DNA of 57,983 bases, counting the filler, from Sluysia triapertura (taxonomy: Eukaryota), in NCBI GenBank assembly GCA_046118255.1. It is 4 parts of 4 records of this genome, joined end to end, with 100 filler letters (N's around TTAATTAATTAA, not from the genome) between each part and the next. Parts side by side here need not be neighbours in the genome. Positions count along the whole stretch, not along the records: positions 14,989 to 30,915 come from JBJNIA010214698.1; 3 more parts are not named here. The stretch is one strand, 5' to 3'. Shown piece by piece: positions 14,989 to 30,915 of the stretch. Under the pieces are notes generated by a model. The model made no database searches. It was not told the origin of the DNA and saw only the letters and a program-made list of their open reading frames with translations. How positions within the stretch are numbered: position 1 is the stretch's first letter; each line of letters begins with the position of its first letter. The position numbers and the translations under genes were made by a program.

Positions 14989-17900
14989 ACTAGCTGTAAT
15001 GTTATCTATCAAATGTTTATTATTCTGAGTCTAAAATCATACAACAATTATAGATGTCAAACTTATGCTATTTGGCTATACCATTCAAGGATTTATTTTT
15101 CGCTTATTCAAAGCGAGTTTAGAAATTGTTATTTTAAATAAGATCACAAATTAAAGATGATTTTGAAAAAAACATAAAATTACTATCGAATAGTCTACTC
15201 GGTTTCCTTTTGAACAAAGCAAGACAGATTTTAAATTATTTTAAAACTAAATAATTTAGTTCCGAAGATAAATTTCGAAAAAAATAGCAATAAGTCTTTG
15301 ACAAAACTACATCGATTAGGCTACATAGATATTAATCAACAAAATAATTGCAAAACAATGTTACAAATTCTAATTTGTAACAATTATCAACAAATGGTTT
15401 GTTAATCTATCATCTATTTTAAAATGATTTTATGTTAAGTTTAAGATTGACAAACCATATAATTTCACAAACCAAGGTTTATTTTATGGAAAATATCTTT
15501 TTGTTATCCGAAGTTTTCAGATATAGCCTTTAAATGTACTACATTTATCGAACTATAACTGATTTAATTACTGATTACTTTCCAAATATTAATTTATTAA
15601 ACGAACTGTTAAATCTATTATACGAATAATTATTGAATAGTCTTCAAAAAATCAATTTAATTCTATTATGTGAATGATCAAGTATGCGTCATACTTTTGA
15701 GAACGTAGTTGTATATATAGACTATTTTTAATAGTTTGACCTGAAAGGTCTTTCAAATGTGTTTCGAAGTAAAATATTGAATTAAAATATTATTAATATT
15801 AAAATATGATATAGTGGATTTTTTATTTATTTTATTTATTTATTTTTAAGTTTTAAATTTAATTCCAAAATATTTTGCTTTGGCACCGATATTTTTGGCA
15901 CTTTAAAAATCACGTAATCAGACGAAGTAATCAGATATCATAATAATTAATAACAATATGACTATTAATTATTACATCATTCAATTCACATTGTTAATAT
16001 CAATATTACTTTTTTATATTATTGTAAACATTCTAAGTTCTTTAAATCTCTTTTCTATTATAGATAATCTTACATAATTTTACACAAATAAAATAAGAAT
16101 GTGAGTTGAGAATGTTTGGCCTGTCAATGATCTGCAGAATGAAATTATTTGCTTAAAGAATATTTATGTCTTAAACTATTTTTCTTTGTATCATATTTTA
16201 AGCCGCAACATCTTACACGAATTAAATATAATAATTTAATTTAAAATAAATAGGGAGTGTTATATGGTGAATTTTTGGGAATGTGAGTTTGTAGATATTC
16301 TAAAACTTAATAATGGTAATTCTCTTGCATCATTTTGCATTGCATTGGGAATTTAAGTATACTCTGTGTCTAATCTTTAATTTGATCTTCAGCATAAATT
16401 AACACATTATTTAAAATGTGTGTAACGAATATTAATGTCGGTGTAGAAATGTTTAAGGGACAATGCTATAAATTGTGTGAGTATTAAAGTGTATGATAAA
16501 CGATGTATAAGGACTTTGTGATTTCTAAACGTGGATTTACAGAATAATGTTATAATATTATTTAATAGTGTAAAAATATAAATAACATATCATTCCTCAT
16601 TCAAAAGTTATTCACACAAACGTAATTTTCTTTAATTAAGTTAATTAAGATTTTAATTAATTATTTATTTATTTTACCTTATTTTATTCTGTGTTTAAAG
16701 GTTTTATCATGGTTATAAAGTTGTTAGATACTTTATAAGGTACTCAGGAGGCTCTAGATTTTTTCACATTCATCATTCTGATTCCTTTTTCTGCTTTTTT
16801 ATTTCAGTTATTAATGTATTAAAATTATCTTTAATATTATTAACCATGATTTTAATTCTTGAACATTTCAAAGGTTCCAAACATTTTACAAGGTTACTCG
16901 AAGGTCTCAAAAGTTTATTAAGGTCTTGAACGTCTTCAAAGATTCCAAAATATCAACAAGGTCTCAAATGATCCTGATTTTCAGAAGTTTAAAGGTATCT
17001 TCATACTTCAAGATACCTTTCCAAACCTTACATAAGACTTCATAATGGTCTCAATACCCTAGAAAGGTCTTTGGAACTCCAAGATGTTCTTTGGTTTCAA
17101 AATGATTATAAACATTTTACTGTTCATTATTCTTGTTCTAGTAATATTTAATTATGTTTATATTATCATATTTCAGATATTTTATATCACTTTTCCTTAC
17201 ACATATTTTAAATTCTTTTACTTTTTAATCTACTTCTTACACTAACTGGATAATCCCAACAAATTCACATTTAATTACTAATGCTAATTCAATCAATTTA
17301 TCTCAATCTCTTATAATATTCGACTTATAATATTTACCTTCTTTTTATTATACTTTAAACTTATGCATTTTAATTCATTTAATACTAAACAAATGATTGC
17401 TAACTTAATAATAAAATTCTATAAATCCTTATCATGCGAATGTCAATACCAACTTTTTATTAAATCAAACTAATATTTTACAATTATTAATTTATTCTCA
17501 CCAAAACGTTAATATATTAACTTTTAAAACCAAAATTTTAAATTCAAAAACAACAATATGAATATGTATTATGTTAATGTTTATAACATACAAAATATTT
17601 ATAAATGTTTAAAAGTACAATATGACTAAAATAAAATATAAACACGATAATAATATAAAGATGATCAAATAATTTATGCTTAGAAATGGGTATTTCTAAT
17701 TTAACTTGTTAAATCTAATGGAGACTTTATCTCTAGCCAAAACTAGAGTTTTTAATGGTTTATTGTATTACATAGAATGTGTCTCCTTTAACATAGACAA
17801 AATTAACTTACAAAAATTTTAAAGGAAGGTTCGAAAATAAGTAACACCGCATAATATTAATCCAAAAGATACTATTGTCTACAATTACTGTATTCTCCTT

Positions 17901-18229
17901 GATAAGATGAATAACAATAATGCTTTTTCTGCTTCTCCGAATTCAAAGCTCGTAAATCGTTGTTACAAAGATTTTCAAAAATTGTACGTGAAAAGATTTT
18001 AAACAGAATTGTTTTGCGAGTTACTAATAATTCAGTATTTATATGTCTGAATAATATGGGCGTATCACAAGTAATTATTAAGTGATTATTATTATCAGAA
18101 GTTAATTTTCATTTATTATTATTATAATTATATTATTATTATTATTATTTTCCATCATAATTTCAGGTATTAACTGTGCACTCTAATACATTCTTATAAT
18201 GATATGAATATGTATTTTCATTTATTAGT

Positions 18230-18371
18230 GAATGATTATTCTTCAGGAACGGTTAATTAAATAAAATGTATCTAATTAGTCTGACTAACCTTCAGAAAAC
18301 TTATTTTGCTAGTTAAGTTTCTTCTACGTAGAATCACAGCAGAATGATTATTCTTCAGGAATGGTTAATTA
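18230..18371 (+). repeat. 30-bp direct repeat pair (period 112)
   Basis: GAATGATTATTCTTCAGGAAYGGTTAATTA at 18230-18259 and 18342-18371. Confidence 0.85.
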
Positions 18372-18407
18372 TCAAAATGAGTTAGATTTATCAATAATGA
18401 ATAAAAG

Positions 18408-18510
18408 TGTTAGACTTCATTGAATGGACTGACAGGGATTTATGGCTGTGACCATTAAGTATAAGTCCAATCTCACAATTTTATTTTATTATAGTTAATT
18501 ATAGTAGCAT
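18408..18510 (-). mobile_element. Degenerate, internally deleted copy of the tRNA-cassette element
   Basis: TGTTAGACTTCATTGAATGGACTGACAGGGATT... closely matches the starts of the copies at 34902 and 48730. Confidence 0.75.
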
Positions 18511-19599
18511 TATTCTCACCCAATTCATGGACATAGCTGCAAGATTCATTTTGTTTTATTATTGTTATTGAGTTTAAAAATTTTCAAGCATTCTATTTTA
18601 ACAATCAGGCATTCTCTCACACAAATAATCTGAATGTTCTTTGAGAATGAGACAGACAATAAAAACTTTGACAATTATATGGTACGGTCTTCCAAATCTT
18701 ACTCGGTGCTATAAAGAACTTGATGGCGTAATGAAACTTTACTTAACTCTGACTTGAGTATAAATTCATATTTTTTCCTTATCCCTCAGATTATGTAATT
18801 TGTCTAACTGTCCTACTATTATTTTATTCCTTTTATTTCTGATTTTGTCTAACTCACAGCTGTAAACTTTTAGTAATTTTATCATCTCGTCGATAATTTA
18901 TAATTTTTATTAAACCTTTATTTTTACTTAATTTAAATGCCGGCTTAAAGTTGTACAAACGATTTAGCATTAATTCAATATTCAATTTAACAAACAATAA
19001 ATACATAGTGAACAATGATAACATATTAAATAAACAAAGATCAAATGAAATGTTACTTCGTACATTCTGTCTCAAGCGATGTCAAAATTCTTTGATGAAC
19101 CGAGAGCAGATAATGTTGCGTCTTTAATGTTATTAATAACAATGGATTAATATCATTTCCATTTACTTAAATAGAATCTCAATAATTTCAATACTTACTA
19201 GATCAAATATAAATTATCACAAATTTTCTTATTTTAATAATGATATTTATTCAACCCCAAAATTGCGTTCTTCAATTCATATTAATAACAGTAACTCAAT
19301 AATTTAATAATTACAAAATCAAATACAGATTTCTATTAAAAGTCTCCGCTTTAACAATAATATGAATTAACTAAAAATGACTAAATCTGAGAATTAACAA
19401 TAGTTTTTATAACAATATTAAGCAAACTATAATCTATCCAAAGAAACCAGAGGTGACGCAACAAATATCAAATTGCAAGATATTTCCTCTTATGCAAAAT
19501 AGTTCTGGAGTCTGTCCGACTAACTAGGCACGATTTATATCAAAAGATGACATCCTAATTAGATTTTAAAAAGATAATTAAACAGAATTTAAAGGACTT

Positions 19600-20400
19600 A
19601 AATTAATTAGTTCCTTAAAAAATATAGTTCAGTAAATGAATAAATCTTTCTCGTCAAACTCTTAAAGTACTTGGTTAAACCAGCCTTCGTACGGTCTGGT
19701 CAATAATAATATATGTTAGGCTTTGAACCAGCCTTTTTACGGCCTGGTCAATATATGAAGATTTTAAATAAATATTAAATATGCAAATGAAAAAATTTAT
19801 TATTAAATCAAAGACAATTTAAATTAATAACACTATTTATATAATGTATAATAAAAATACGCAGTCTAGATCTTAAGTTCGACACTTAGATCAAGTTATT
19901 TTAAAAGATTTTAAGTCAGCCTTTTTACGGTCTGACATATATTAAAAAAGGTTGAGTGATATTTTATGTTCTATTGTTTTACAATTAGAACTAGAAAATC
20001 TTATACAGAAATTAATTACTTTTTCATGGAATAATGATTGAAATCTTCAACAAAATTGTAAGAGCAGCGCTGAATTTTCTAGATTGTCTTCTGTGTGTGT
20101 TTTTTCTAGATTGTGTAATGTTATTTATACATAATTTAACTTACTCGCCTCCATATTTTAAAATAGTACATTAAAACAAAAGTTTTAACTTTAATTCTGA
20201 TTTTAATTAATTAAATTTTAACTTAAATTCTGATTTTAATTTATAATACTAATGATAATATTTTATGATTTTAATTTATAATAATAATGATAATATTTAA
20301 ATAAATAAAATGAATATTAATAATGAAATAATAATGTCAAATAATAAAATGAATAGTCAACCATAATAAAATAATAATCAAATAAATAATCAAATGTAAT
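19600..20400 (-). repeat. Solo LTR-like copy of family A (boundaries approximate)
   Basis: Three hairpin motifs (19679, 19727, 19915), AGGTTGAGTG and TTCATGGAA..GAAATCTT blocks shared with 38520-38615, and a minus-strand GGCG..TATAAATA block at ~20120-20150. Confidence 0.6.
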
Positions 20401-20550
20401 AAGATAATAAATATCAAATAATAAAAGGAATAATCACCGAATCCATTAAAATATCATTGTGTGCTAATTGTGTGCCAATTGTATCAGATTGTGCCAAATC
20501 CAATAAACTGTAATGGTAAAATAAGCATAAGAAATACTTGAATTAAAGAA

Positions 20551-21075
20551 CATCACACAATATAACACTTTCATGAATGTGCAATGATCGTGGAATCGAA
20601 CACAGTGCAATTTTTCAATCAACTAAATCTTTCATATTACGTTTAAACATTTCTGGTAATAAACCAACATAAAGGGAAATTTTATTATTTACATAAATGA
20701 CAATTTAATATATCTTCTCTAGAATTCATCATAAAATCTATAAATTCTTGCAATCTATGATGTTTCAGAGTTATCACGTAAAAAATTCAATGTAATAACT
20801 ATGTAGGAAGATGATACACCTTCATGAATTTGTTTCCCTCGATCGGTATAATCTCCTTGGAATAAGTATTCAATATCATCTGGTAAACCAATATATGAAA
20901 TATATCGCCCATGTGTATCTCCATAGATTTCAGCTTTTTATTAGGTTGAAACGAAATTACTTTTTGGACTATATGGTTCACGTTCAAAATATCTTTAAAA
21001 TATAATTTAACCGGTTTTCCTGTTTATTTTGGACATACAATAGTTCTATTATTTCCGTTAAATTTAAAGTTACAT
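20551..21075 (-). pseudogene. PP1: Ser/Thr protein phosphatase 1 catalytic subunit pseudogene (PPP family)
   Basis: Minus-strand translation: IYGDTHGRY (GDxHG, 20922-20908), YLFQGDYTDRGKQ (GDxVDRG, 20856-20836), LRDNSE..IARIYRFYDEF*RRY (cf. LRGNHE..INRIYGFYDECKRRY), ..ILCD. Stops and deletions throughout. Confidence 0.88.
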
Positions 21076-21202
21076 TTTCGCATTTGATGAGAAACAGGAT
21101 CACTGATTTTATTTAAATTGTTTTGCTTAAATTGTTTATTTAAATTTCACCATAAAAATTTTTTACTAATTTAATTATATAATAATGATAATATAATAAT
21201 AA

Positions 21203-21244
<42 letters not shown>

Positions 21245-21263
21245 ATTATTATTATTATTATTA
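21203..21263. repeat. (ATT)n microsatellite
   Basis: Long ATT run; similar runs at ~18115-18150, 32468-32503 and 46790-46838. Confidence 0.9.
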
Positions 21264-23119
21264 CAGCAATAATTGAAAAATAATAATAATGTCGGTTTTT
21301 AACTAAGAGAATAGTAACGTTTAATCCTTTAGCTAGATCACGATTATTTCTTCCTTTGTCTAACGTATCATTAATAAAGTGAACAACGTTAATGTTATTT
21401 CTTCCAAAGTGAGAAATATTTGAGACATGAGCTATGTCAAATAAATCATAAAATGTGTGATGAATTTTAGTTTCATTTGGGATTTTTTAAATGCTACATA
21501 ATTTTTGCAAGATCTACATATAACAAAAACAGCTTTATCAATGGTCTTTTCATAAACATAAACATATGAATTTGAATAATATTATTTTTCATGAAACATT
21601 AATTAAATGACCTTTAATGAATTTAAATAATGATAAAGCCACTTTAAATTACTTCTGTTGGGATTAGTGAAAGATAAATATCGATATAAGGGTCAGGACT
21701 GAGGATAATAGAATAAGGTGAATGTTATTGAAGAATTAAGATAAAGTATTATGATGAACTGTAATAGTAAAATAAGCATAAGAAATACTTGAATTAAAAC
21801 AAATTAATGAGAAATATGAAGAAATAACCCTTTAAAAGGTTTTATTTGTTAAAATATTAAAGTTCATTTGTTAATTAACTTAATTAAAATTTGTTTAATT
21901 TGATAATTCAATAAAAATGTTTGCTCATGATATAATAATATTGAGTTTTATTAGTATTTTTAATGATGAAGTTTGCGAAGCTTGTCAACGTTGATAACGT
22001 AATTTATAATTTAATTTTTATAATTTATAATTTATAATTTTTATAATTTAAAATTAAAGTTAAATATAAGAATTAATAATATATATATCAAATTAATGCT
22101 TATAGAGAGACCAATTCAAACATGTTATTGAACTTGACGTGCAACTACAATTGACGCATAACGTATTAATGCGGAATATTCCTTTGAGAAATAAATTTAA
22201 TGTTTCATTAATTTTATCTTTAAATTAAGTTGACAAATTATTAATATAATAACAATATAATAATGATTTTTAATGTTAATTAGATGGTTTCCAAAGGATA
22301 AAGAGATTGTCTACCACAAATCCCATTATCTTAGCATAATTAGAATGATAATGACGTTGAACATAGACGGAAATTGCTGTCAAAATCTATAAAATTGGTG
22401 GACTTATTGGCGTATAAAATAAAAACGACAGCTTTAATTTCCGTCTTGTTCAATTTCTGATTTGTATTTTCTCTAATTATCTTAAAATTGCTATATAAGA
22501 GTTACATTTCTGCAAGAAAAACAGAAGTGAAGCCGACGTTAAGACGGATTAAAGAAAAATCAAATTAATTTTTCAACTGCAGGGAGGCTGCTCTAGTTCA
22601 TTAGTGGATAACGGTGACATTAAAGTTATTTCTTTAGTAATTGTCTAAAATAAACCATTTTCTTTTTAGAACAAGGATTAGTCATACATTTCTTATTGTT
22701 TATATTTTGCATTAATCCGGGTGCTAAAGTTTAAATAAGTTGTATCATCAATGGTTGTGATTTAGCTTTAAAGAATAATTTTCATTTTTATAAAGAGTAA
22801 TTTGTATTGTCATAGTTATAAAGAGTAGTTTATATATTTTCGCTGTAATCTTGTGATAATATAAAAAATATATCGAGATTTTGAATTTATTTAGTTATTG
22901 AGTTTTAATTTAATAAGTTTAGGAAAATAAAATTATTAAAAGACACAACGGTTCCGTAAACCTTTCTAGCCTCTGGATATTTCTGATAAAAGTCAGGATG
23001 ACTGCTAAATATTAACCCTTTGCGCGATTAATAAAAAAGAAAATAATTATTTTCAAGATTATATATACTTATTTGGTTTATAGTAAATTGTGTTATCAAA
23101 TTGTAAGTAAATATAATTT

Positions 23120-23731
23120 CTAGATGTTTTGAATCTCAGTATTTTTATCTAATCGACCATTTCTAAGTAAAGCAGGATCTAATATATCTACTCTGTTAGT
23201 ATCTGCCATTACTTTTATATCATGATTTGGTTGGAATCCATCTAAGTGATTTAGTAATTCCAACATAGTACGTTGAACCTCACGATCATTAACTTCCATT
23301 GCTTTAACGCGTGAATCAATTTCAGCAGGTAATTTTTCTAAAATTAAATACGAATCTTTATTGACACCAACTAAATCGCCTGGTTTTAAATCAGATGCTT
23401 CAACTAAACCTATTATTGGTAGAAAATAAGTATGTCTAGTACTGGTTTTGACTACAGCACATTTACCTTTTCTCTGGGCATCTAAATCAAGGTTACTACC
23501 TTCTTCTTCATCAGGGTCAGGTTCAACATCCAATAATTCTATCACATTTGATACTAAATAAGACAGAGCTTTATTTGATTTAATTTTCCTTTTATTTTCT
23601 TTAATTATATCTTGCTAAGTTTTCGTTTCATGATTAACATGTGTTAATTCAGATTTCATAATTCTAATTTCAGTTTCTAATAGCCTTATTGGATTTGAAA
23701 GATCATCGTTTGATATTATTAATTCTGCCAT
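23120..23731 (-). pseudogene. PSMC3: 26S proteasome regulatory ATPase 6A (Rpt5) pseudogene with internal deletion
   Basis: RLLETEIRIMKSE...[11 protein letters not shown]...[24 protein letters not shown]...SRVKAMEV joined directly to [17 protein letters not shown]...[12 protein letters not shown]. In-frame TAG at 23617-23615; Walker A and B are absent; C-terminus truncated. Confidence 0.92.
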
Positions 23732-25301
23732 GGTAAAAAATATAGTATAGCATTGGGGAAAAACATTGAAGAAAAACAAAAAAATAGAAAGACGGATTAA
23801 AAATAAGGATAAAAGAAATAATAATGATAACAATAACATGGTTATTATATTTATTAATACTGAAGTGTTTATGTTAAAATTTATTATAAAAGTTATTACT
23901 TGATAATCATGTTATATAACAATAATGACAATAACTATTATATATATTTTAATACGATCTGAATTGTAATAACAATAACGGTAGATCATGATAATTAGAT
24001 GCGATGATCATGCTTTGTTTTTTGAATGAGTTTAGTAGTTTGTTTAATAGTTTGTGTACATGTGAAGTGTTTTTATGTGATGAAGTGTGATGAATTCCCT
24101 AGAGATGATATTTACAATTATAAATAACAAGAAACGGTTATTAAGACTACTTACATATCCAAATATAATATATGTATACTTATCTATTTTTAACCATGAA
24201 AAATGATTCTATAAAAAGTAAAAAGTCAGTTACAACTCCAGGTATATGTAAAAGGAAACACCAGGTAATAAATTTTAAAATATAAGTTAATAAAACGCGA
24301 ATCGAACAATCTCTAAACTAACTTGAATATCTTGAATATTTCTTCGAATTCGATCACGAGAATTATCCGGGGATTCCGTTACTTCGACATGTAGAGCCTG
24401 AAGTTCGTTTACCTGAAACAAAACAATGACTGAAGTGCATCTTTTGAAGACTGATTAATATTAATTTCGTCTGATTTTAAAATGAATATTTATTATTTTA
24501 GAGAATCATAATAATTAAAAGTGAACAATGTTTAATTAAAAATAACCTGATACAGGAAACTGGGAATAAGTTACTATGGAAACAGTATCTAACTAAACCA
24601 TTATAACCAAGAATAAGCATGTATGAAATATTGACATATTAGTACAGTTGATGAATGACTGTTTCTCCATGAAAAAGAAATTGATTGAAATTACAGTAAC
24701 CGAATAGTTAGAGAAAACTTATAATAAAAGGAGAATGCAATACAACGAAACCTATTGGCTACAATGGATAGCAAAATAGCCAATGGTATAAAAAAGAAAA
24801 TTTTTAGTCTATATACGTAGATCAATTACAATAAGACAAAAGATGTCTCACGATATTTACAGAGGAATTTAATGACAAAGATCGATTTATTCAACATTTT
24901 GAAAAAAGAAATTAATCATACGAAGATGTTACTGTATCGAATTTTATTTTATTATTTTTTTAAAAAGAAAACCATAACAATAAGTGGTAGCTAAAACATA
25001 TTTTTGTATAAAAAATTTATTTGTGTTGTGTATTTATTCACAATAATTCAATAATGAAATTAGTTTAAAATATCTTAACATTTGTATCACTAAACAGGTA
25101 CAAATTATTGCTTATTCTTTGATAATAATATACTCTTAATATTCTCAGTTATAAATAAATTAAATATAACACAATCAAATAACAAAATACAATTCTAAAA
25201 ATCCAGCGGTAACACTACACGTAAAATGTATTTAAAACAAATGTATAAAAACGTGGATTAATTAACAACAATAATAAAAATAACATCACTCTAATATTTA
25301 A

Positions 25302-25982
25302 TCAGTTACTGAAGATCAGTCTCAAAAGTGTTGAAGCAGGTTGTAGTCTTTCATTTAAAAACTTTATTATGAAATTATTTTTAAAATATGTTATTTTATT
25401 ACTTTTATTAAAACCAAAAAGGAAGGACTTAAGGTCCTTTAAAAAACATGTCATTGAATTGAATAACAAATAAGAATAATTAATTCCATTTATTGAAAAA
25501 TTAGTACAAACAAAAACACCAAAAATTTTGTTATAAAAATCAAAACTAGATAAAATTTTCCACTTTATAAAATTATTAAAACCTGGAACAAAGTAGTATT
25601 TCCAACTAAAACCTTGATCGCAAGAAGTGATTTCATTTCCGTAAGCAAAGTAAAATTCTCGTAAATCCACGGCATTTGGACTTAAACATGAAGCACAAAG
25701 ATGAGCAATACATGCTCGAATAAAACTGTAGTGAGATTCTTGATTTTTTTGAACTAGTTTAGCCGCGTTCCGTTCTTTCAGCTTCGCTTCTAGTGTAGCA
25801 TAACTTAAAGACAATTTATTTAGAAAATCATCATCGCACAAAGTCCCGTCTTTTTGAATAATTAAAATAAAAGTAACTTCACTTACATTATCTAAATTAT
25901 TTTTAGTATTTACTTGTTCAAAGTCTACAACGCGTGCATTGACGTTTTTGTGTGACTTATTCTTGGCTCTACTTTGTAACAT
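25302..25982 (-). CDS. Hypothetical protein, 226 aa, no recognised family
   Basis: Uninterrupted 681-nt ATG-initiated ORF, unlikely by chance at this AT content; no motif recognised. Confidence 0.5.
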   Translation of the reverse strand: MLQSRAKNKSHKNVNARVVDFEQVNTKNNLDNVSEVTFILIIQKDGTLCDDDFLNKLSLSYATLEAKLKERNAAKLVQKNQESHYSFIRACIAHLCASCLSPNAVDLREFYFAYGNEITSCDQGFSWKYYFVPGFNNFIKWKILSSFDFYNKIFGVFVCTNFSINGINYSYLLFNSMTCFLKDLKSFLFGFNKSNKITYFKNNFIIKFLNERLQPASTLLRLIFSN

Positions 25983-28109
25983 TTATATTTTTCTTAAAAG
26001 TTGATGTGAACTTTTGGTAAACATAAAAATATTTCTTCTGTGGACTTTTTTAGTTTTAAAGAATACGTATTTAGTTTTATGAATTACCTTTAAATTTTAA
26101 TATTAAAACAAAAATTAAAAAGATAAAATATTTATGAAATTTCTTTTAAACTTTCTTTGTATTTAAATCTTGTTTTGGTTATTTTATTTAAATATTCTTT
26201 TAGTTTTTTTGTCGTGTCTAAATATTGAAAACGTTTGTTTTTATAAGTTCCGTGGAACTTTCAGAAATACAATGTTTCGTGCTGCATGACAAATGTATAG
26301 TACAACAAAAACAATAAAAATGATAATCACCGTAGGACAGCAAAAGTGTGACTCCTAGTGGTGTTATTGGAGATGGGAACGATACCGTAAAAAAATATTA
26401 GATCACATTAAATAAAAAAGAAAACGTATTTGGTTATTATGATTTTAGGGTGATTACATTAATTTTGCTGTAAAATTTTATGTTTCGAAGTTTTAAGCTT
26501 TGTAGTTATGTTAAAAGTGGTAAATTAATAATAATAAATTTGGCATATGGCGATGCGTCAGTAATAGAAATTGTTGTTGGAGTTTGCGTATAATTTACGG
26601 TGAGGTTTCAAATATATGTTGACCGTATATGAATGTTTTAAAATGTGTGAAAAGTATCAAAATGTTTTGTTTGTGAATCAATCGTGTATAGGTTTGTGTG
26701 TAACAAGATCGTTATGCGTCTGTGGCACCACAGTTGACACATTCCACCCATTCTCAGCTCCTTGCTTTCATTCTGCTGGGCATGAAACAGAACTGAAGCT
26801 GCAATTAATGTATTCCATCTTCTGCTTCCGCTGTATGCATTTGATTCATTTGTCGCCTGTCTTGTTCGTTCTGAGGTGCCCGTTCTTCTTCAATTTAATG
26901 TGCAGTTACTCGTCATACTGCTTTCGTTTTGTGAGTAAGAAGACCTAAATTTAATCTTCTGCGATACATTATTTGGATGAATTATTATTTGCAATGAAAA
27001 AGGATCAAATTTATAAGGGAAAAACTGTAAAACCTTATAAAGGACATAATGTAGTAACGAAATATATCCTTAAAAGGCAAAATTGTTACACTGTTTGATT
27101 CAGGTCGTTAGAGCGAACTACCAATCACGAAGAAACTGTTTACATGAAAAATAATTTAATGATGCACAATCTGTATTATGTATTGGAATAGGCAAAACTT
27201 ATAATGATTTACCGAAATTATTTTCGCATATCATTTCAGAAACTCGTTTTGATTTTTCCATAATCAATCTAATTTCATAATCGATCTAATTGTCCACAGA
27301 AGCAACATAATTAATGTTTTGATCATCAGAAAACACTTTGTAATATATTTTATTCCCATGGTCTCGGAAATACTGATATTTTCATCTTTACAGCCAATAT
27401 GATGTTATCAAAACTTAGGATTTTTACTGCAAACCCACTTTTCATAATGTTACTGTTTAATTGAAAAATTTTCTTACTAGTTGATGTTAAACTAATATTT
27501 TATAAATTTCAATTCTACCATTTTTTGAGAATCGATTAAATCATGATGTTTTACTTTAAACTTAACTACTGTTAGTTGTGACAACCCAATCGGTAACTAA
27601 TGACCAAATGCTTTATCAAAAGCAGATTTATCTTTAAGTGGAATCGTATCAAATGACTTAGGCTTAGATGTTTAGGTTTTACAAAGATCTATATATTGTT
27701 ATTGTTAAACATTTAATACAAATCTTGGGCGGTATTCATTAATTTTTTATGAAATGGCTTCAAATTTTTATCGGCAAACACGCAAATATTTAAGACTAAG
27801 GTTAATAATTTCGTATACTTAGATCTCATTTTCAGATCATTTAATTATATGACCTAACAATACCACTACATAGTTCGGTATTCCTAGCAAGGAAAACTTG
27901 AAAAATGGAATATTGGATCAGTCGTTTCTAATTAATGGACCTGAAAATAAAACGGTAAGATCTGAACGCAATGAATGAATCCCACATATTTAAGGATATC
28001 ACGACTGCAATATAAAATTATAAATACTAGAAGTTCAAACAAATATATTAAAAATTTAATGAAAGTGTAATAGGTAATCTGAATTTATTAGCTATATTAC
28101 ATCATAACA

Positions 28110-28676
28110 TCATTTTGTTTTTCTTTGAATAAAATTTTTTACCTGTTCTAATAACCAGTCAAAACCTTGCTGCAATCCTTCTCCAGTTAAGGCATTACTA
28201 GATACAATATTCCATGTATGATCTTTAACTTCATCAAGACATAGAATTTGTGTACACTTAACACTTGTTACTGCATCTTTGGCATCCATTTTATTAGCAA
28301 AAAACAAAATTGGTACTTTTCTTAAACCTTTATCACTTAATATAGTGTCTAATTCATCCTTTGCGACCACCATTCTTAAATGATCAGAACTATCTATAAC
28401 AAATATTATTGCATCACTATCTTTAATATAAGTATTCCACAAGTTACGATAACGACCTTGTCCACTCATATCAAAACAGGTTAAGTTTAAACCTTTGGTA
28501 CAAATTTTTTCTACGTTAAAACCAATAGTTGGTACTATATCATGACTCTGGATATTTGGTGGTTTTATTTTATTTAGAATAGTAGTTTTGCCACTATTAT
28601 CTAAACCAACTACTAAAACTTTAGCTTCTTTTTTACGTGCACCAAAAAAGCTAATAAGAGATTCCAAAAATCCCAT
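28110..28676 (-). CDS. ARL6: ADP-ribosylation factor-like protein 6 (BBS3), intronless
   Basis: MG N-terminus, [14 protein letters not shown], the ARL6-diagnostic [40 protein letters not shown] and GEGLQ.G.DWL. Confidence 0.95.
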
Positions 28677-30555
28677 ACGAATTATATCATAATTATAGAC
28701 ATCAATGTTACAAAATTAAAAACTTTAATAACAATACTTAAGTATTTGTAAAAATAAAAATCATTATGGTAAATATATAAATTGTAAAAATGTATTAATC
28801 TATATTTCACAAACTATTATAAATACGTCTCGTTGCTAATACTAATAGTTAAAGTATTTTAACTACTAAAACAAAGAAGTCTTATTCATGAAATGTTCTC
28901 TACATATGATATTCTGGCGAACTTGATGACCATTTTAAAGTCAGACTAATTAAATTTTAACGAATTTTTATAAAATATAATTTTTATGTTTAATGAAAAT
29001 AAAAATAAGAAAACAGTGCAATTTACAAGAATATAATAAATTCTAGATAAATGCCCCTGACTTGTAAATGATGAAACAAAGAATTCGAGTGTATGTGATC
29101 TGATTCATGAATTTTGCTATTATGAGTATTAGGTTGTCAAAGATGAAATTTGACTAAAAGGCAAAGTTAATTGATAATTTACAAATATAAGGAATATTTT
29201 TATTCATCAAAGTATGCACCAATATTGTTGCTCAGGTTGGTGGTATAAATGAATTCCTGGAAGACCTGTTTTACATCATTGTCAGATTTAAATTGTTATC
29301 CTATTAAAACGTCCAGATGTGGCAGTTAGTGGAAGCTAGGTGTGGTTAGTATGGATGATAATGAAGAAGTTCCACTTCCAATTAAAGTATTTTCTGTATT
29401 CGCTTATAAAACTCATAAATTTCATATAATGCATGTGCTAATGTGGTGCGTAAAATGTAATATCAACAATGAATTATTATCAAAAATCAATACATAGTAG
29501 ACAAAAGAAGTGCTTTTGAAAAATTTCCTTACGTTATAGTTATAAACATCTCTGTTTACGGAGGTTTTATTCAACACGGTTCTTACTTTAGTTATAAATA
29601 ATGCCTAATTTCTAGTGGAGAAAATAATTTTTAATTTAGAGTCTATTATCCAAATACGAATGAAGTCATTGTACTAAAAATGGAAGAATAGAGTAAAATC
29701 AGAATAAAATCAGAATTTTTATGTTATTGCAGTAACTTTAAACTAAAATTAGTCCATCTAGGATATGAATAAAATTAAAATAATCGTAACATCACGTAAG
29801 TTAAATTATGTGATAAAATTATTGCAGAGAATAAAAATTAGTAAAAATTTTAAAAACTTAGTTTTCAGCAGTGTTTAATTAAAATGAAGCATTTTGTTTT
29901 CAATCACAACTCGAAACACTGCAATAGCCGTAAATCATAAAATAATTTTATCAGATGCCATTCAAAATTTATTAATGATAAAAATCGAAATCAAACCTTG
30001 GAGATTTACGTCTTTTACAACAATAAATGCTACTGAAATGATTGCATAATTGTTTAATTTTTAGTAATTTTGATGATCAAGTTACTTTACTTAACTTTAT
30101 TAAAAAATCACCGATGTCAGACTGTCAGTCAAACACTCATTTTTGTGAAAAGTTAATGGGTATATTGTTTCAATCAAAAAACACAGAATTCGAAACATGA
30201 CTTGGTAGTATTTCTATAAATGAATGTCCAATTATGCGTTCTTGTTTACTATTCTAATGTGAGAATGTTGCTCAAAAATATGGTAGTTAATGCGTATAAA
30301 TTAGTAACCGATCTACATAAGCACGAACCATAAGAAGGTTTTAAAAGAAATATTATAGATATATTTAGAGAATTTTTAGTTGTAATTGAAGTGAAATACT
30401 AATTCAACGACATTCAATACCCTATGAATCTGACACCGTAAATACTTCGTTTCTCATTATATTTGGCCTATAAATCATGATATTGTAATAGTTAAACCTT
30501 TTGTTAGTTTTTCATATTTTGTATTGTTAATTTGTGTACTTAGAAAAATCATTTG

Positions 30556-30710
30556 TGTTAGACATCATAAAATAGGCTGACCGGGGATCGAACCCGGGAC
30601 TTCTCGTGCGAAATTTTAATGCTCCATCACTGAGTTATCAGCCCGTCTAACAATTTTTAGATTACTATATTCAATTATACCAAATGTCATCTTAGGCCTA
30701 TATCCCAACA
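30556..30710 (-). mobile_element. tRNA-cassette element (complete copy, 155 bp) with 4-bp TSD
   Basis: TTTG|TGTTAGAC...GTCTAACA(30652)...CCCAACA|TTTG. The minus strand has acceptor GGGCTGA/TCAGCCT, A-box TAACTCAGTGA, T-arm CCGGG-TTCGATC-CCCGG and TTTT. Confidence 0.88.
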
Positions 30711-30760
30711 TTTGTTTAAATATTAAAGTAGTAAAATTATTAATAATAATATATTAATTT

Positions 30761-30822
30761 ATATTGCGCGCATATTTACTACAAAGTAAGTACTCAAAAG
30801 CACTTAAAGTAAATCATTCACC
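30761..30822 (-). repeat. Fragment of dispersed repeat family B
   Basis: Reverse complement TGAATGATTTACTTTAAGTGCTTTTGAGTACTTACTTTGT matches 43731-43770 and ~39341-39380. Confidence 0.8.
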
Positions 30823-30915
30823 TGTTGGGGTAAAAGGTCTAAAAAGTGCCAAGTAGTATAATTGAATATATTAAAAATGAAATTGTTAGACGGGGCTGAT
30901 AGCTCAGTGGTAGAG
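30823..30915 (+). mobile_element. tRNA-cassette element, truncated by contig end
   Basis: TGTTGGGG...GTATAATT...TGTTAGAC GGGGCTGATAGCTCAGTGGTAGAG (canonical A-box/D-arm), abutting repeat family B. Confidence 0.85.

What the first reader, a model, noticed from the sequence alone, without database searches (positions are those of the whole stretch)
30556..30710. A tRNA-like Pol III cassette packaged as an integrase-type mobile element (TG...CA ends, 4-bp TSD) rather than a SINE
Seen: six copies (18408, 30556, 30823, 34764, 34902, 48730). The unit is TGTTGGG, a ~58-bp leader with GTATAAT about 35 nt upstream of the tRNA start, TGTTAGAC, a tRNA-like body (7-bp acceptor stem, A-box, B-box, T-stem, variable anticodon arm), a short T run and GTCTAACA. 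TSDs are 4 bp (TTTG/TTTG, AAAT/AAAT, ATAC/TTAC) and there is no poly(A) or repeat tail. Sequence upstream of the Pol III start travels with the element, which retroposed SINEs cannot do. Known: TGT..ACA ends with 4-bp TSDs mark Gypsy integrases and Ginger transposases; Cassandra TRIMs carry 5S in their LTRs. Inference: a tRNA-bearing MITE or mini-LTR that spreads whole Pol III units (potential insulators, primer decoys or small-RNA sources). I do not recognise it as a described family.
Basis: partly seen in the sequence, partly recalled or inferred. Interest (0 to 1): 0.9.

Follow-up and report, generated by a model that had tools for sequence, protein, structure and literature searches.

The report
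tRNA-like mini-LTR repeat, Helenus-type
A 155-base mobile repeat carrying a degenerate tRNA gene with its own upstream promoter is real and very abundant in this animal genome, and it looks like a lone long terminal repeat (LTR) of the tRNA-bearing miniature retrotransposons named Helenus in 2024, so it is a new family of a recently described kind, not a new class.

Summary
Element A (30556-30710, minus strand) reads TGTTGGG, a 58-nt leader with GTATAAT at -36, TGTTAGAC, a 72-nt tRNA-like body (Rfam tRNA 34.8 bits; A and B boxes; no anticodon stem), TTTT, then a tail ending GTCTAACA. It is flanked by TTTG/TTTG.

Copy B (30823-30915) is cut by the piece edge. Copy C (18408-18514) is decayed. 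Contigs of one public run show that this is a very high-copy family. More than 100 contigs break into unrelated sequence exactly at 30556 and at 30710.

The promoter-bearing leader lies inside the mobile unit, there is no A-tail, the ends are TG...CA and the target-site duplication (TSD) is 4 bp. That fits integrase-type insertion, not a SINE.

The kind is already described. Kojima 2024 (PMC10886601) named Helenus/TRIMp3: miniature LTR retrotransposons (TRIMs) with a tRNA-like sequence in each LTR. The animal families have TGT...ACA ends, LTRs of 104-266 bp and 4-bp TSDs. A matches that LTR layout but none of the published sequences.

[quoted passage not shown] Membership therefore stays probable (about 0.55). 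The main rival is a self-contained miniature element.

The parts
30556..30710 (-). Element A, the complete 155-bp unit: probable solo LTR of a Helenus-type TRIM
   Evidence: Sequence. Family boundaries at exactly 30556 and 30710 from 155 and 116 contigs that run into unrelated sequence.
30704..30710 (-). 5' terminus TGTTGGG (start of the U3-like leader)
   Evidence: The same start, TGTTGGGG, opens copy B at 30823. Four contigs carry a unit starting at 30823 behind other sequence (table 5).
30674..30680 (-). GTATAAT, a TATA-like box 36 nt upstream of the tRNA-like +1
   Evidence: TATAAT is invariant in A, B and C. No variant is listed inside it among the laid contigs, while neighbouring leader positions vary (table 3).
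30645..30652 (-). Internal TGTTAGAC, a perfect 8-bp inverted partner of the 3' terminus
   Evidence: I2, 100% complementary. It extends the acceptor stem in the RNA fold.
30573..30644 (-). tRNA-like body with an A box (TAACTCAGTG) and a B box (GGTTCGATCCC), acceptor and T stems, and no anticodon stem
   Evidence: Rfam RF00005, 34.8 bits, E 3.8e-4. ARAGORN finds nothing. Motifs.
30569..30572 (-). TTTT run directly after the tRNA-like body (candidate weak Pol III terminator, the R/U5 border in the LTR model)
   Evidence: for the sequence. The role is inferred.
30556..30568 (-). 13-nt tail ATGATGTCTAACA (U5-like) ending in CA
   Evidence: Boundary.
30552..30555 (.). Target-site duplication TTTG, one copy
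30711..30714 (.). Target-site duplication TTTG, other copy
   Evidence: Chance of 4/4 is about 0.009.
30823..30915 (+). Copy B: TGTTGGGG, leader with GTATAAT (30856-30862), TGTTAGAC (30884-30891) and the first 23 nt of the tRNA-like body, cut by the edge of the piece. It is close to the most abundant subfamily.
   Evidence: Highest summed depth. It interrupts the repeat at 30741-30822.
18408..18514 (-). Copy C: old, decayed copy with a deletion of most of the tRNA-like body. It keeps TATAAT, TGTGAGAT, the acceptor 3' strand and GTCTAACA. It belongs to a subfamily with a different leader.
   Evidence: About 24 of 30 bases match the alternative leader printed at 30874.

Best explanation
Element A is most likely a solo LTR of a non-autonomous LTR retrotransposon of the TRIMp3/Helenus kind. 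It belongs to a new and very abundant family in an unidentified AT-rich animal.

Proposed layout of the 155-bp LTR:
- U3: the 66-nt leader (TGTTGGG ... GTATAAT ... TGTTAGAC). It supplies a TATA-like element at about -36.
- R: the tRNA-like body. Its A and B boxes recruit TFIIIC/TFIIIB, so that Pol III starts at or near its first base.
- R/U5 border: the TTTT run, a leaky terminator.
- U5: the last 13 nt, ending CA.

Proposed life cycle:
- In a full element, a transcript starting in the 5' LTR reads through to the 3' LTR.
- It is reverse-transcribed from a tRNA primer at a PBS, which regenerates both LTRs, promoter leader included.
- The integrase of a Gypsy-type partner inserts it by its TG...CA ends, making a 4-bp duplication.
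- LTR-LTR recombination later leaves solo LTRs such as A.

Shown here: the anatomy, the exact boundaries, the family's abundance, one 4-bp TSD, and the absence of a tail or a functional anticodon arm.
Inferred: the U3/R/U5 assignment, Pol III use, the Gypsy partner, and the existence of full-length copies.
For: - Anatomy and one TSD are shown.
- Both termini are fixed by more than 100 contigs each with unrelated flanks. The family is high-copy: summed word depth is 5e3 to 2e6 inside the unit against about 25 in the unique flank, which is a rough guide only.
- A is an insertion. Three contigs join its left and right flanks without it (tables 5 and 5c).
- B interrupts another repeat exactly at its TGTTGGGG start. 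Four contigs show units starting at that base behind other sequence.
- Published animal Helenus LTRs have the same plan: TGT...ACA ends with a few inverted bases, a leader, a tRNA-like sequence with A and B boxes, a T-run a few bases later and a short tail. Their LTRs are 104-266 bp, their TSD is 4 bp, solo LTRs are common, and most do not encode a usable tRNA (PMC10886601).
- The T-arm half of A differs by one base from the matching 23 nt of Helenus-2_TeGr, compared by eye. This is weak evidence because T arms are conserved in general.
Against: - No second LTR, PBS or PPT lies next to A or C, and there is no direct pair in the 16-kb piece.
- None of the 15 joints listed is an LTR-internal-LTR arrangement, and 9 more are hidden. 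The flanks of the 155 and 116 boundary contigs show no common sequence (agreement 0.43-0.45). Identical junctions collapse into a few contigs, however, so this is weak.
- The apparent copy number (order 1e4-1e5) is far above any reported Helenus family (at most 5,575 LTRs).
- The TSD length rests on one copy.
- None of the six short motifs of this unit that I searched for in the published Helenus file gave a family match.
Confidence: 0.55

Rival explanations
1. The 155-bp unit is itself the transposing entity. It would be a miniature non-autonomous element moved as DNA, or as a single unit, by a DDE transposase or integrase that recognises TGTT...AACA ends (Ginger-like or other). It captured a whole Pol III gene with its upstream TATA element and terminator. 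No paired-LTR form exists.
For: - Sharp ends, a 4-bp TSD and TGT...ACA termini.
- Very high apparent copy number, typical of MITEs and untypical of TRIMs.
- No paired copies or internal portion were seen.
- The tRNA-like body sits between a perfect 8-bp inverted repeat.
Against: - The outer termini share only TGTT plus 1 of the next 3 bases, much less than the inverted repeats usual for MITEs.
- The perfect 8-bp inverted repeat is inner-to-outer, not outer-to-outer.
- The layout matches published LTRs point by point.
- No transposase partner is known, and none is encoded in the piece.
Confidence: 0.25
2. It is an unconventional tRNA-derived SINE, retroposed by a LINE from a transcript that starts upstream of the leader. 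The short tail would be the LINE recognition site.
For: - A tRNA-like head with intact A and B boxes in a very abundant family.
- LINE-type retroposition seems to operate in this genome: an intronless ARL6 ORF and a proteasome-ATPase fragment that looks like a processed pseudogene.
Against: - 66 nt upstream of the Pol III start and 13 nt beyond the T-run lie inside the sharply bounded unit.
- There is no A-rich or microsatellite tail.
- The TSD is only 4 bp, and the ends are TG...CA.
- Rfam finds no other small-RNA promoter module in the leader.
Confidence: 0.07
3. These are ordinary tRNA genes or pseudogenes that share flanks through local or segmental duplication. They are not a mobile element.
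For: A and B lie head to head 112 bp apart and share the upstream sequence.
Against: - 11,510 contigs lie on the stretch, with breaks at fixed ends into unrelated sequence.
- There is a TSD and no anticodon stem, and ARAGORN is negative.
- There are insertions into other repeats and empty paralogous sites.
Confidence: 0.02

Closest known systems
[quoted passage not shown]
   Same: - A unit of 155 bp, within the animal LTR range of 104-266 bp.
- TGT...ACA ends with a few inverted bases, and a 4-bp TSD.
- The order leader, tRNA-like sequence with A and B boxes, T-run, short tail.
- The tRNA-like part is not a usable tRNA.
- Solo copies with TSDs occur.
   Different: - None of the six short motifs of this unit that I searched for gave a family match in the published file.
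- No full-length copy (two LTRs, PBS, PPT) has been seen here.
- Apparent copy number is 10-100 times higher than the largest reported family.
- A conserved TATAAT lies at about -36, and an 8-bp inverted repeat brackets the tRNA-like body.
- The host is not close to any named species in the protein search.
Cassandra (plants) and Ajax (nemerteans): TRIMs with a 5S rRNA-derived Pol III promoter in the LTRs
   Same: The principle is the same: a small-RNA gene promoter rides inside an LTR and is copied with it by LTR-type replication.
   Different: They carry 5S, not tRNA, their TSDs are 5 bp, and their hosts differ.
tRNA-derived SINEs (SINE2)
   Same: A tRNA-like module with A and B boxes, high copy number and short length.
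   Different: A SINE starts at the tRNA-like +1 and ends in a LINE-related or A-rich tail with variable TSDs. Here the leader and the post-terminator tail belong to the unit, there is no such tail, and the TSD is 4 bp.
Ginger DNA transposons and their miniature derivatives (from my own knowledge of Bao, Kapitonov and Jurka 2010)
   Same: TGT...ACA termini and 4-bp TSDs.
   Different: Ginger elements have substantial terminal inverted repeats. Here the outer ends share only about 5 of 7 bases.

Membership tests
Helenus / TRIMp3 | A tRNA-derived sequence with conserved A and B boxes inside the repeat unit (LTR) | tested here: met
   Rfam tRNA 34.8 bits. A box TAACTCAGTG and B box GGTTCGATCCC. 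B carries TAGCTCAGTGG.
Helenus / TRIMp3 | LTR-type termini TG...CA (TGT...ACA in the animal families) at the true ends of the repeat | tested here: met
   TGTTGGG...GTCTAACA. Ends fixed by 155 and 116 contigs with unrelated flanks.
Helenus / TRIMp3 | 4-bp target-site duplication (animal families) | tested here: met
   TTTG/TTTG around A, chance about 0.009. This is one copy only. C is not recognisable and B is cut.
Helenus / TRIMp3 | Two LTRs in direct orientation around a short internal portion with a PBS and a PPT | tested here: inconclusive
   No pair, PBS or PPT beside A or C, nor anywhere in the 16-kb piece. No such joint is listed. The genome itself could not be searched.
Helenus / TRIMp3 | Sequence relationship to a published Helenus family (not required for the kind, only for family assignment) | tested here: not met
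   Of the six short motifs searched in the published file, three are absent. The other three occur only as the T-arm (three LTRs) or as single hits in unrelated LTRs. No family alignment was run. Read as a new family if it is a member of the kind.
SINE2 (tRNA-derived SINE) | The unit begins at the Pol III start of the tRNA-like head | tested here: not met
   66 nt of leader lie inside the family boundary.
SINE2 (tRNA-derived SINE) | A 3' tail that is A-rich, a simple repeat or LINE-derived, and variable TSDs | tested here: not met
   The unit ends ...ATGATGTCTAACA directly against the TSD. The same end is seen in C.
MITE of a DNA transposon (such as Ginger) | Terminal inverted repeats of about 10 bp or more at the outer ends | tested here: not met
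   Only TGTT/AACA plus 1 of the next 3 bases. The only perfect inverted repeat pairs the 3' end with an internal site.
Functional tRNA gene | A complete cloverleaf with an anticodon stem-loop | tested here: not met
   ARAGORN finds none. The anticodon-arm region of A cannot pair. That region varies most among the contigs (table 3, 30608-30618).

The most novel reading that the evidence does not exclude
The 155-bp unit is not a recombination remnant. It would be a self-sufficient mobile cassette: a complete Pol III gene (upstream TATA element, internal A and B boxes, terminator) bracketed by integrase-type TG...CA ends, inserted as a single unit with 4-bp TSDs, and amplified to the order of 1e4-1e5 copies. 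That would be a non-autonomous element type distinct from SINEs, MITEs and TRIMs. It would seed the genome with tens of thousands of TFIIIC/TFIIIB binding sites.
Probability: 0.2. Interest if true: 0.75.

Novelty: new member of a known kind. Interest (0 to 1): 0.4.

Why it matters
- Helenus/TRIMp3 elements were described only in 2024, from a Repbase-guided screen. Their largest reported family has a few thousand copies.
- A family that reaches perhaps tens of thousands of copies would show that LTR-type replication of a Pol III promoter can rival SINE amplification. The host is an animal not close to any named species in the protein search.
- It would be a good system for several open questions: which polymerase makes the template RNA, how a T-run terminator inside the 5' LTR is bypassed, and which Gypsy partner mobilises it.
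- In practice, such units inflate tRNA gene predictions and are misfiled as SINEs. They also add many A-box/B-box sites that could act as TFIIIC-bound boundaries. That last point is inference only.

Tried and rejected
- Getting more copies failed. The exact-product look-up of the neighbouring ARL6 gene found nothing.
- Pattern scans of metagenome contigs, viral contigs and genome contigs found no copy. The single hit, L002, is a chance match in 41% GC coding-like DNA.
TSDs of other copies could therefore not be tabulated.
- A literature search for the element's own words found nothing, and the MITE-plus-tRNA search found nothing.
- No reverse transcriptase or integrase is encoded in the piece, and the self-comparison shows no LTR pairs.
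- Two other TGTTGGGAT sites (17253-17261, 21656-21664) were checked for a tRNA-like body or a TSD-bounded CA end. Neither was found.
- The organism could not be named. The best ARL6 match is 74% to an unnamed transcript contig (L001), and named animals reach about 60%.

Full report
**What is there**

The piece (14989-30915) has 25% GC. It carries an intronless ARL6 ORF and a proteasome-ATPase fragment. ARL6 matches named animals at only about 60% and an unnamed contig at 74%. The host is therefore an animal with no close named relative in that search.

Read on the minus strand, element A (30556-30710) consists of:
- TGTTGGG at unit positions 1-7;
- a leader with GTATAAT at 31-37;
- TGTTAGAC at 59-66;
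- a 72-nt tRNA-like body at 67-138;
- TTTT at 139-142;
- the tail ATGATGTCTAACA at 143-155.

Rfam scores the body as tRNA at 34.8 bits against a gathering score of 29, E 3.8e-4. It has an acceptor stem, a T arm, an A box and a B box. ARAGORN finds no tRNA, and the anticodon-arm region cannot pair.

TGTTAGAC and the terminal GTCTAACA form a perfect 8-bp inverted repeat that prolongs the acceptor stem in the predicted fold. The outer termini share only TGTT plus 1 of the next 3 bases.

A is flanked by TTTG on both sides. The chance of this is about 0.009, and sliding the borders would allow up to 6 bp.

Copy B (30823-30915, plus strand) repeats the first 93 nt at 77% identity and is cut by the piece edge. 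Copy C (18408-18514, minus strand) is decayed and has lost most of the tRNA-like body. No other copy lies in the piece.

**Is it a family with those ends?**

One public run holds the stretch. When its contigs were laid on 30300-30915 at 80% likeness or more, 11,510 contigs matched.
- Unique flanks have a word depth of about 25. Bins inside the units sum to between 5e3 and 2e6. The tool warns that this is not a copy number, so I read it only as an order of 1e4-1e5 for the B-like subfamily and fewer for A-like copies.
- 155 contigs leave the reference exactly before 30556 and 116 exactly after 30710. Their continuations are unrelated (agreement 0.43-0.45, close to the base composition).
- Three contigs at single-copy depth join A's left flank to its right flank without A. 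This is consistent with empty paralogous or allelic sites.
- B starts exactly where another very abundant repeat (30741-30822) is interrupted: 71 contigs continue that repeat differently after 30822. Four contigs show a unit starting at 30823 behind other sequence.
- Contigs that lie partly on B and partly on A, on opposite strands, show that B-like copies have the same 3' half.
- An alternative leader upstream of 30874 (181 contigs) matches copy C in about 24 of 30 positions. There are therefore at least two leader subfamilies, and both keep TATAAT.

**What it cannot be**

A Pol III transcript of the tRNA-like gene would start near unit position 67 and stop at the T-run. It would lack both the 66-nt leader and the last 13 nt, yet both are inside the mobile unit. 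There is no A-rich or repeat tail.

A dispersed true tRNA gene family is excluded by the boundaries, the TSD and the missing anticodon arm. A classical MITE is unlikely because outer terminal inverted repeats are nearly absent.

**What it most likely is**

The literature search found Kojima 2024 (PMC10886601). [quoted passage not shown] Helenus is grouped with Cassandra and Ajax as TRIMp3.
- The animal families are reported from six phyla.
- Their LTRs are 104-266 bp and their internal portions 43-343 bp.
- They always make 4-bp TSDs.
- They appear to be mobilised by Gypsy elements.
- They often survive mainly as solo LTRs.

The published LTR sequences all read the same way: TGT..., a leader, a tRNA-like sequence, a T-run within a few bases, a short tail...ACA. 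Element A has exactly this plan and size.

My mapping is U3 for the leader with its TATA-like box, R for the tRNA-like body up to the T-run, and U5 for the last 13 nt. LTR-type replication would explain why the sequence upstream of the Pol III start travels with the element. This mapping, the use of Pol III, read-through of the TTTT run and a Gypsy partner are all inferences.

**What is missing**

The defining full-length form, two LTRs with a PBS and a PPT, was not seen. A and C have no PBS-like or PPT-like neighbours, the piece has no direct pair, and no LTR-internal-LTR joint is among the joints listed. That absence is weak evidence. Contigs from a k-mer assembly break at repeats, identical junctions collapse into few contigs, and published families are often 75-90% solo.

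The public collections I could scan do not contain this genome. Of the six short motifs of this unit that I searched for in the published Helenus file, three are absent. The others occur only as the T-arm or as single hits in unrelated LTRs. If it is a member, it is a new family.

The apparent copy number far exceeds the largest reported Helenus family of 5,575 LTRs. That keeps alive the alternative that the unit is itself the transposing entity.

**Verdict**

The claim that the kind is undescribed is not.

My confidence in each reading is:
- solo LTR of a new Helenus-type family: 0.55;
- self-contained miniature element: 0.25;
- unconventional SINE: 0.07;
- duplicated tRNA genes: 0.02.

I built no family consensus and looked up no letters beyond the piece edge.

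Noticed in passing
window 30741-30822: A second very abundant repeat (summed depth 0.3-0.9 million against about 25 in unique flank), with a family boundary at 30741. 71 contigs continue it differently after 30822, so copy B appears to be inserted into it. Its nature is unknown.
   Followed up: partly
window 17253-17261 (-) and 21656-21664 (+): The 5' terminal word of element A, TGTTGGGAT (TGTTGGGATTA at both extra sites), occurs three times in the window against 0.08 expected. At the two extra sites no tRNA-like body or TSD-bounded CA end follows. They may be termini of other LTR families served by the same integrase.
   Followed up: partly
window 28110-28676 (-): An intact, intronless 188-aa ARL6 (BBS3) ORF. 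The best database match is 74%, to an unnamed transcript contig, and named animals reach about 60%. It may be a retrogene, or the host may be poor in introns.
   Followed up: partly
window 23120-23545 (-): A 141-aa ORF with the OB C-terminal domain and only the end of the AAA domain of a proteasomal ATPase (Rpt1/PSMC2-like). The AAA core is missing, so it looks like a damaged processed pseudogene.
   Followed up: no
window 30468-30509 and the joints 30511/30533/30535 to 30709-30712: The left flank of A is itself a low-copy repeat (depth 85-115). Three contigs bridge the insertion site without A, in two cases with 12 and 27 other letters between (tables 2, 5, 5c).
   Followed up: no
window 30874 (table 7) and copy C 18408-18514: At least two leader subfamilies share the part from about 20 nt upstream of the tRNA-like body onward and keep a TATAAT word. 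Copy C belongs to the alternative one.
   Followed up: partly
window 20503-20547 and 21754-21798; 19674-19934: A 45-nt direct repeat at 96% identity 1.25 kb apart, and a 25-nt motif present three times within 260 nt. These may be fragments of other repeats.
   Followed up: no
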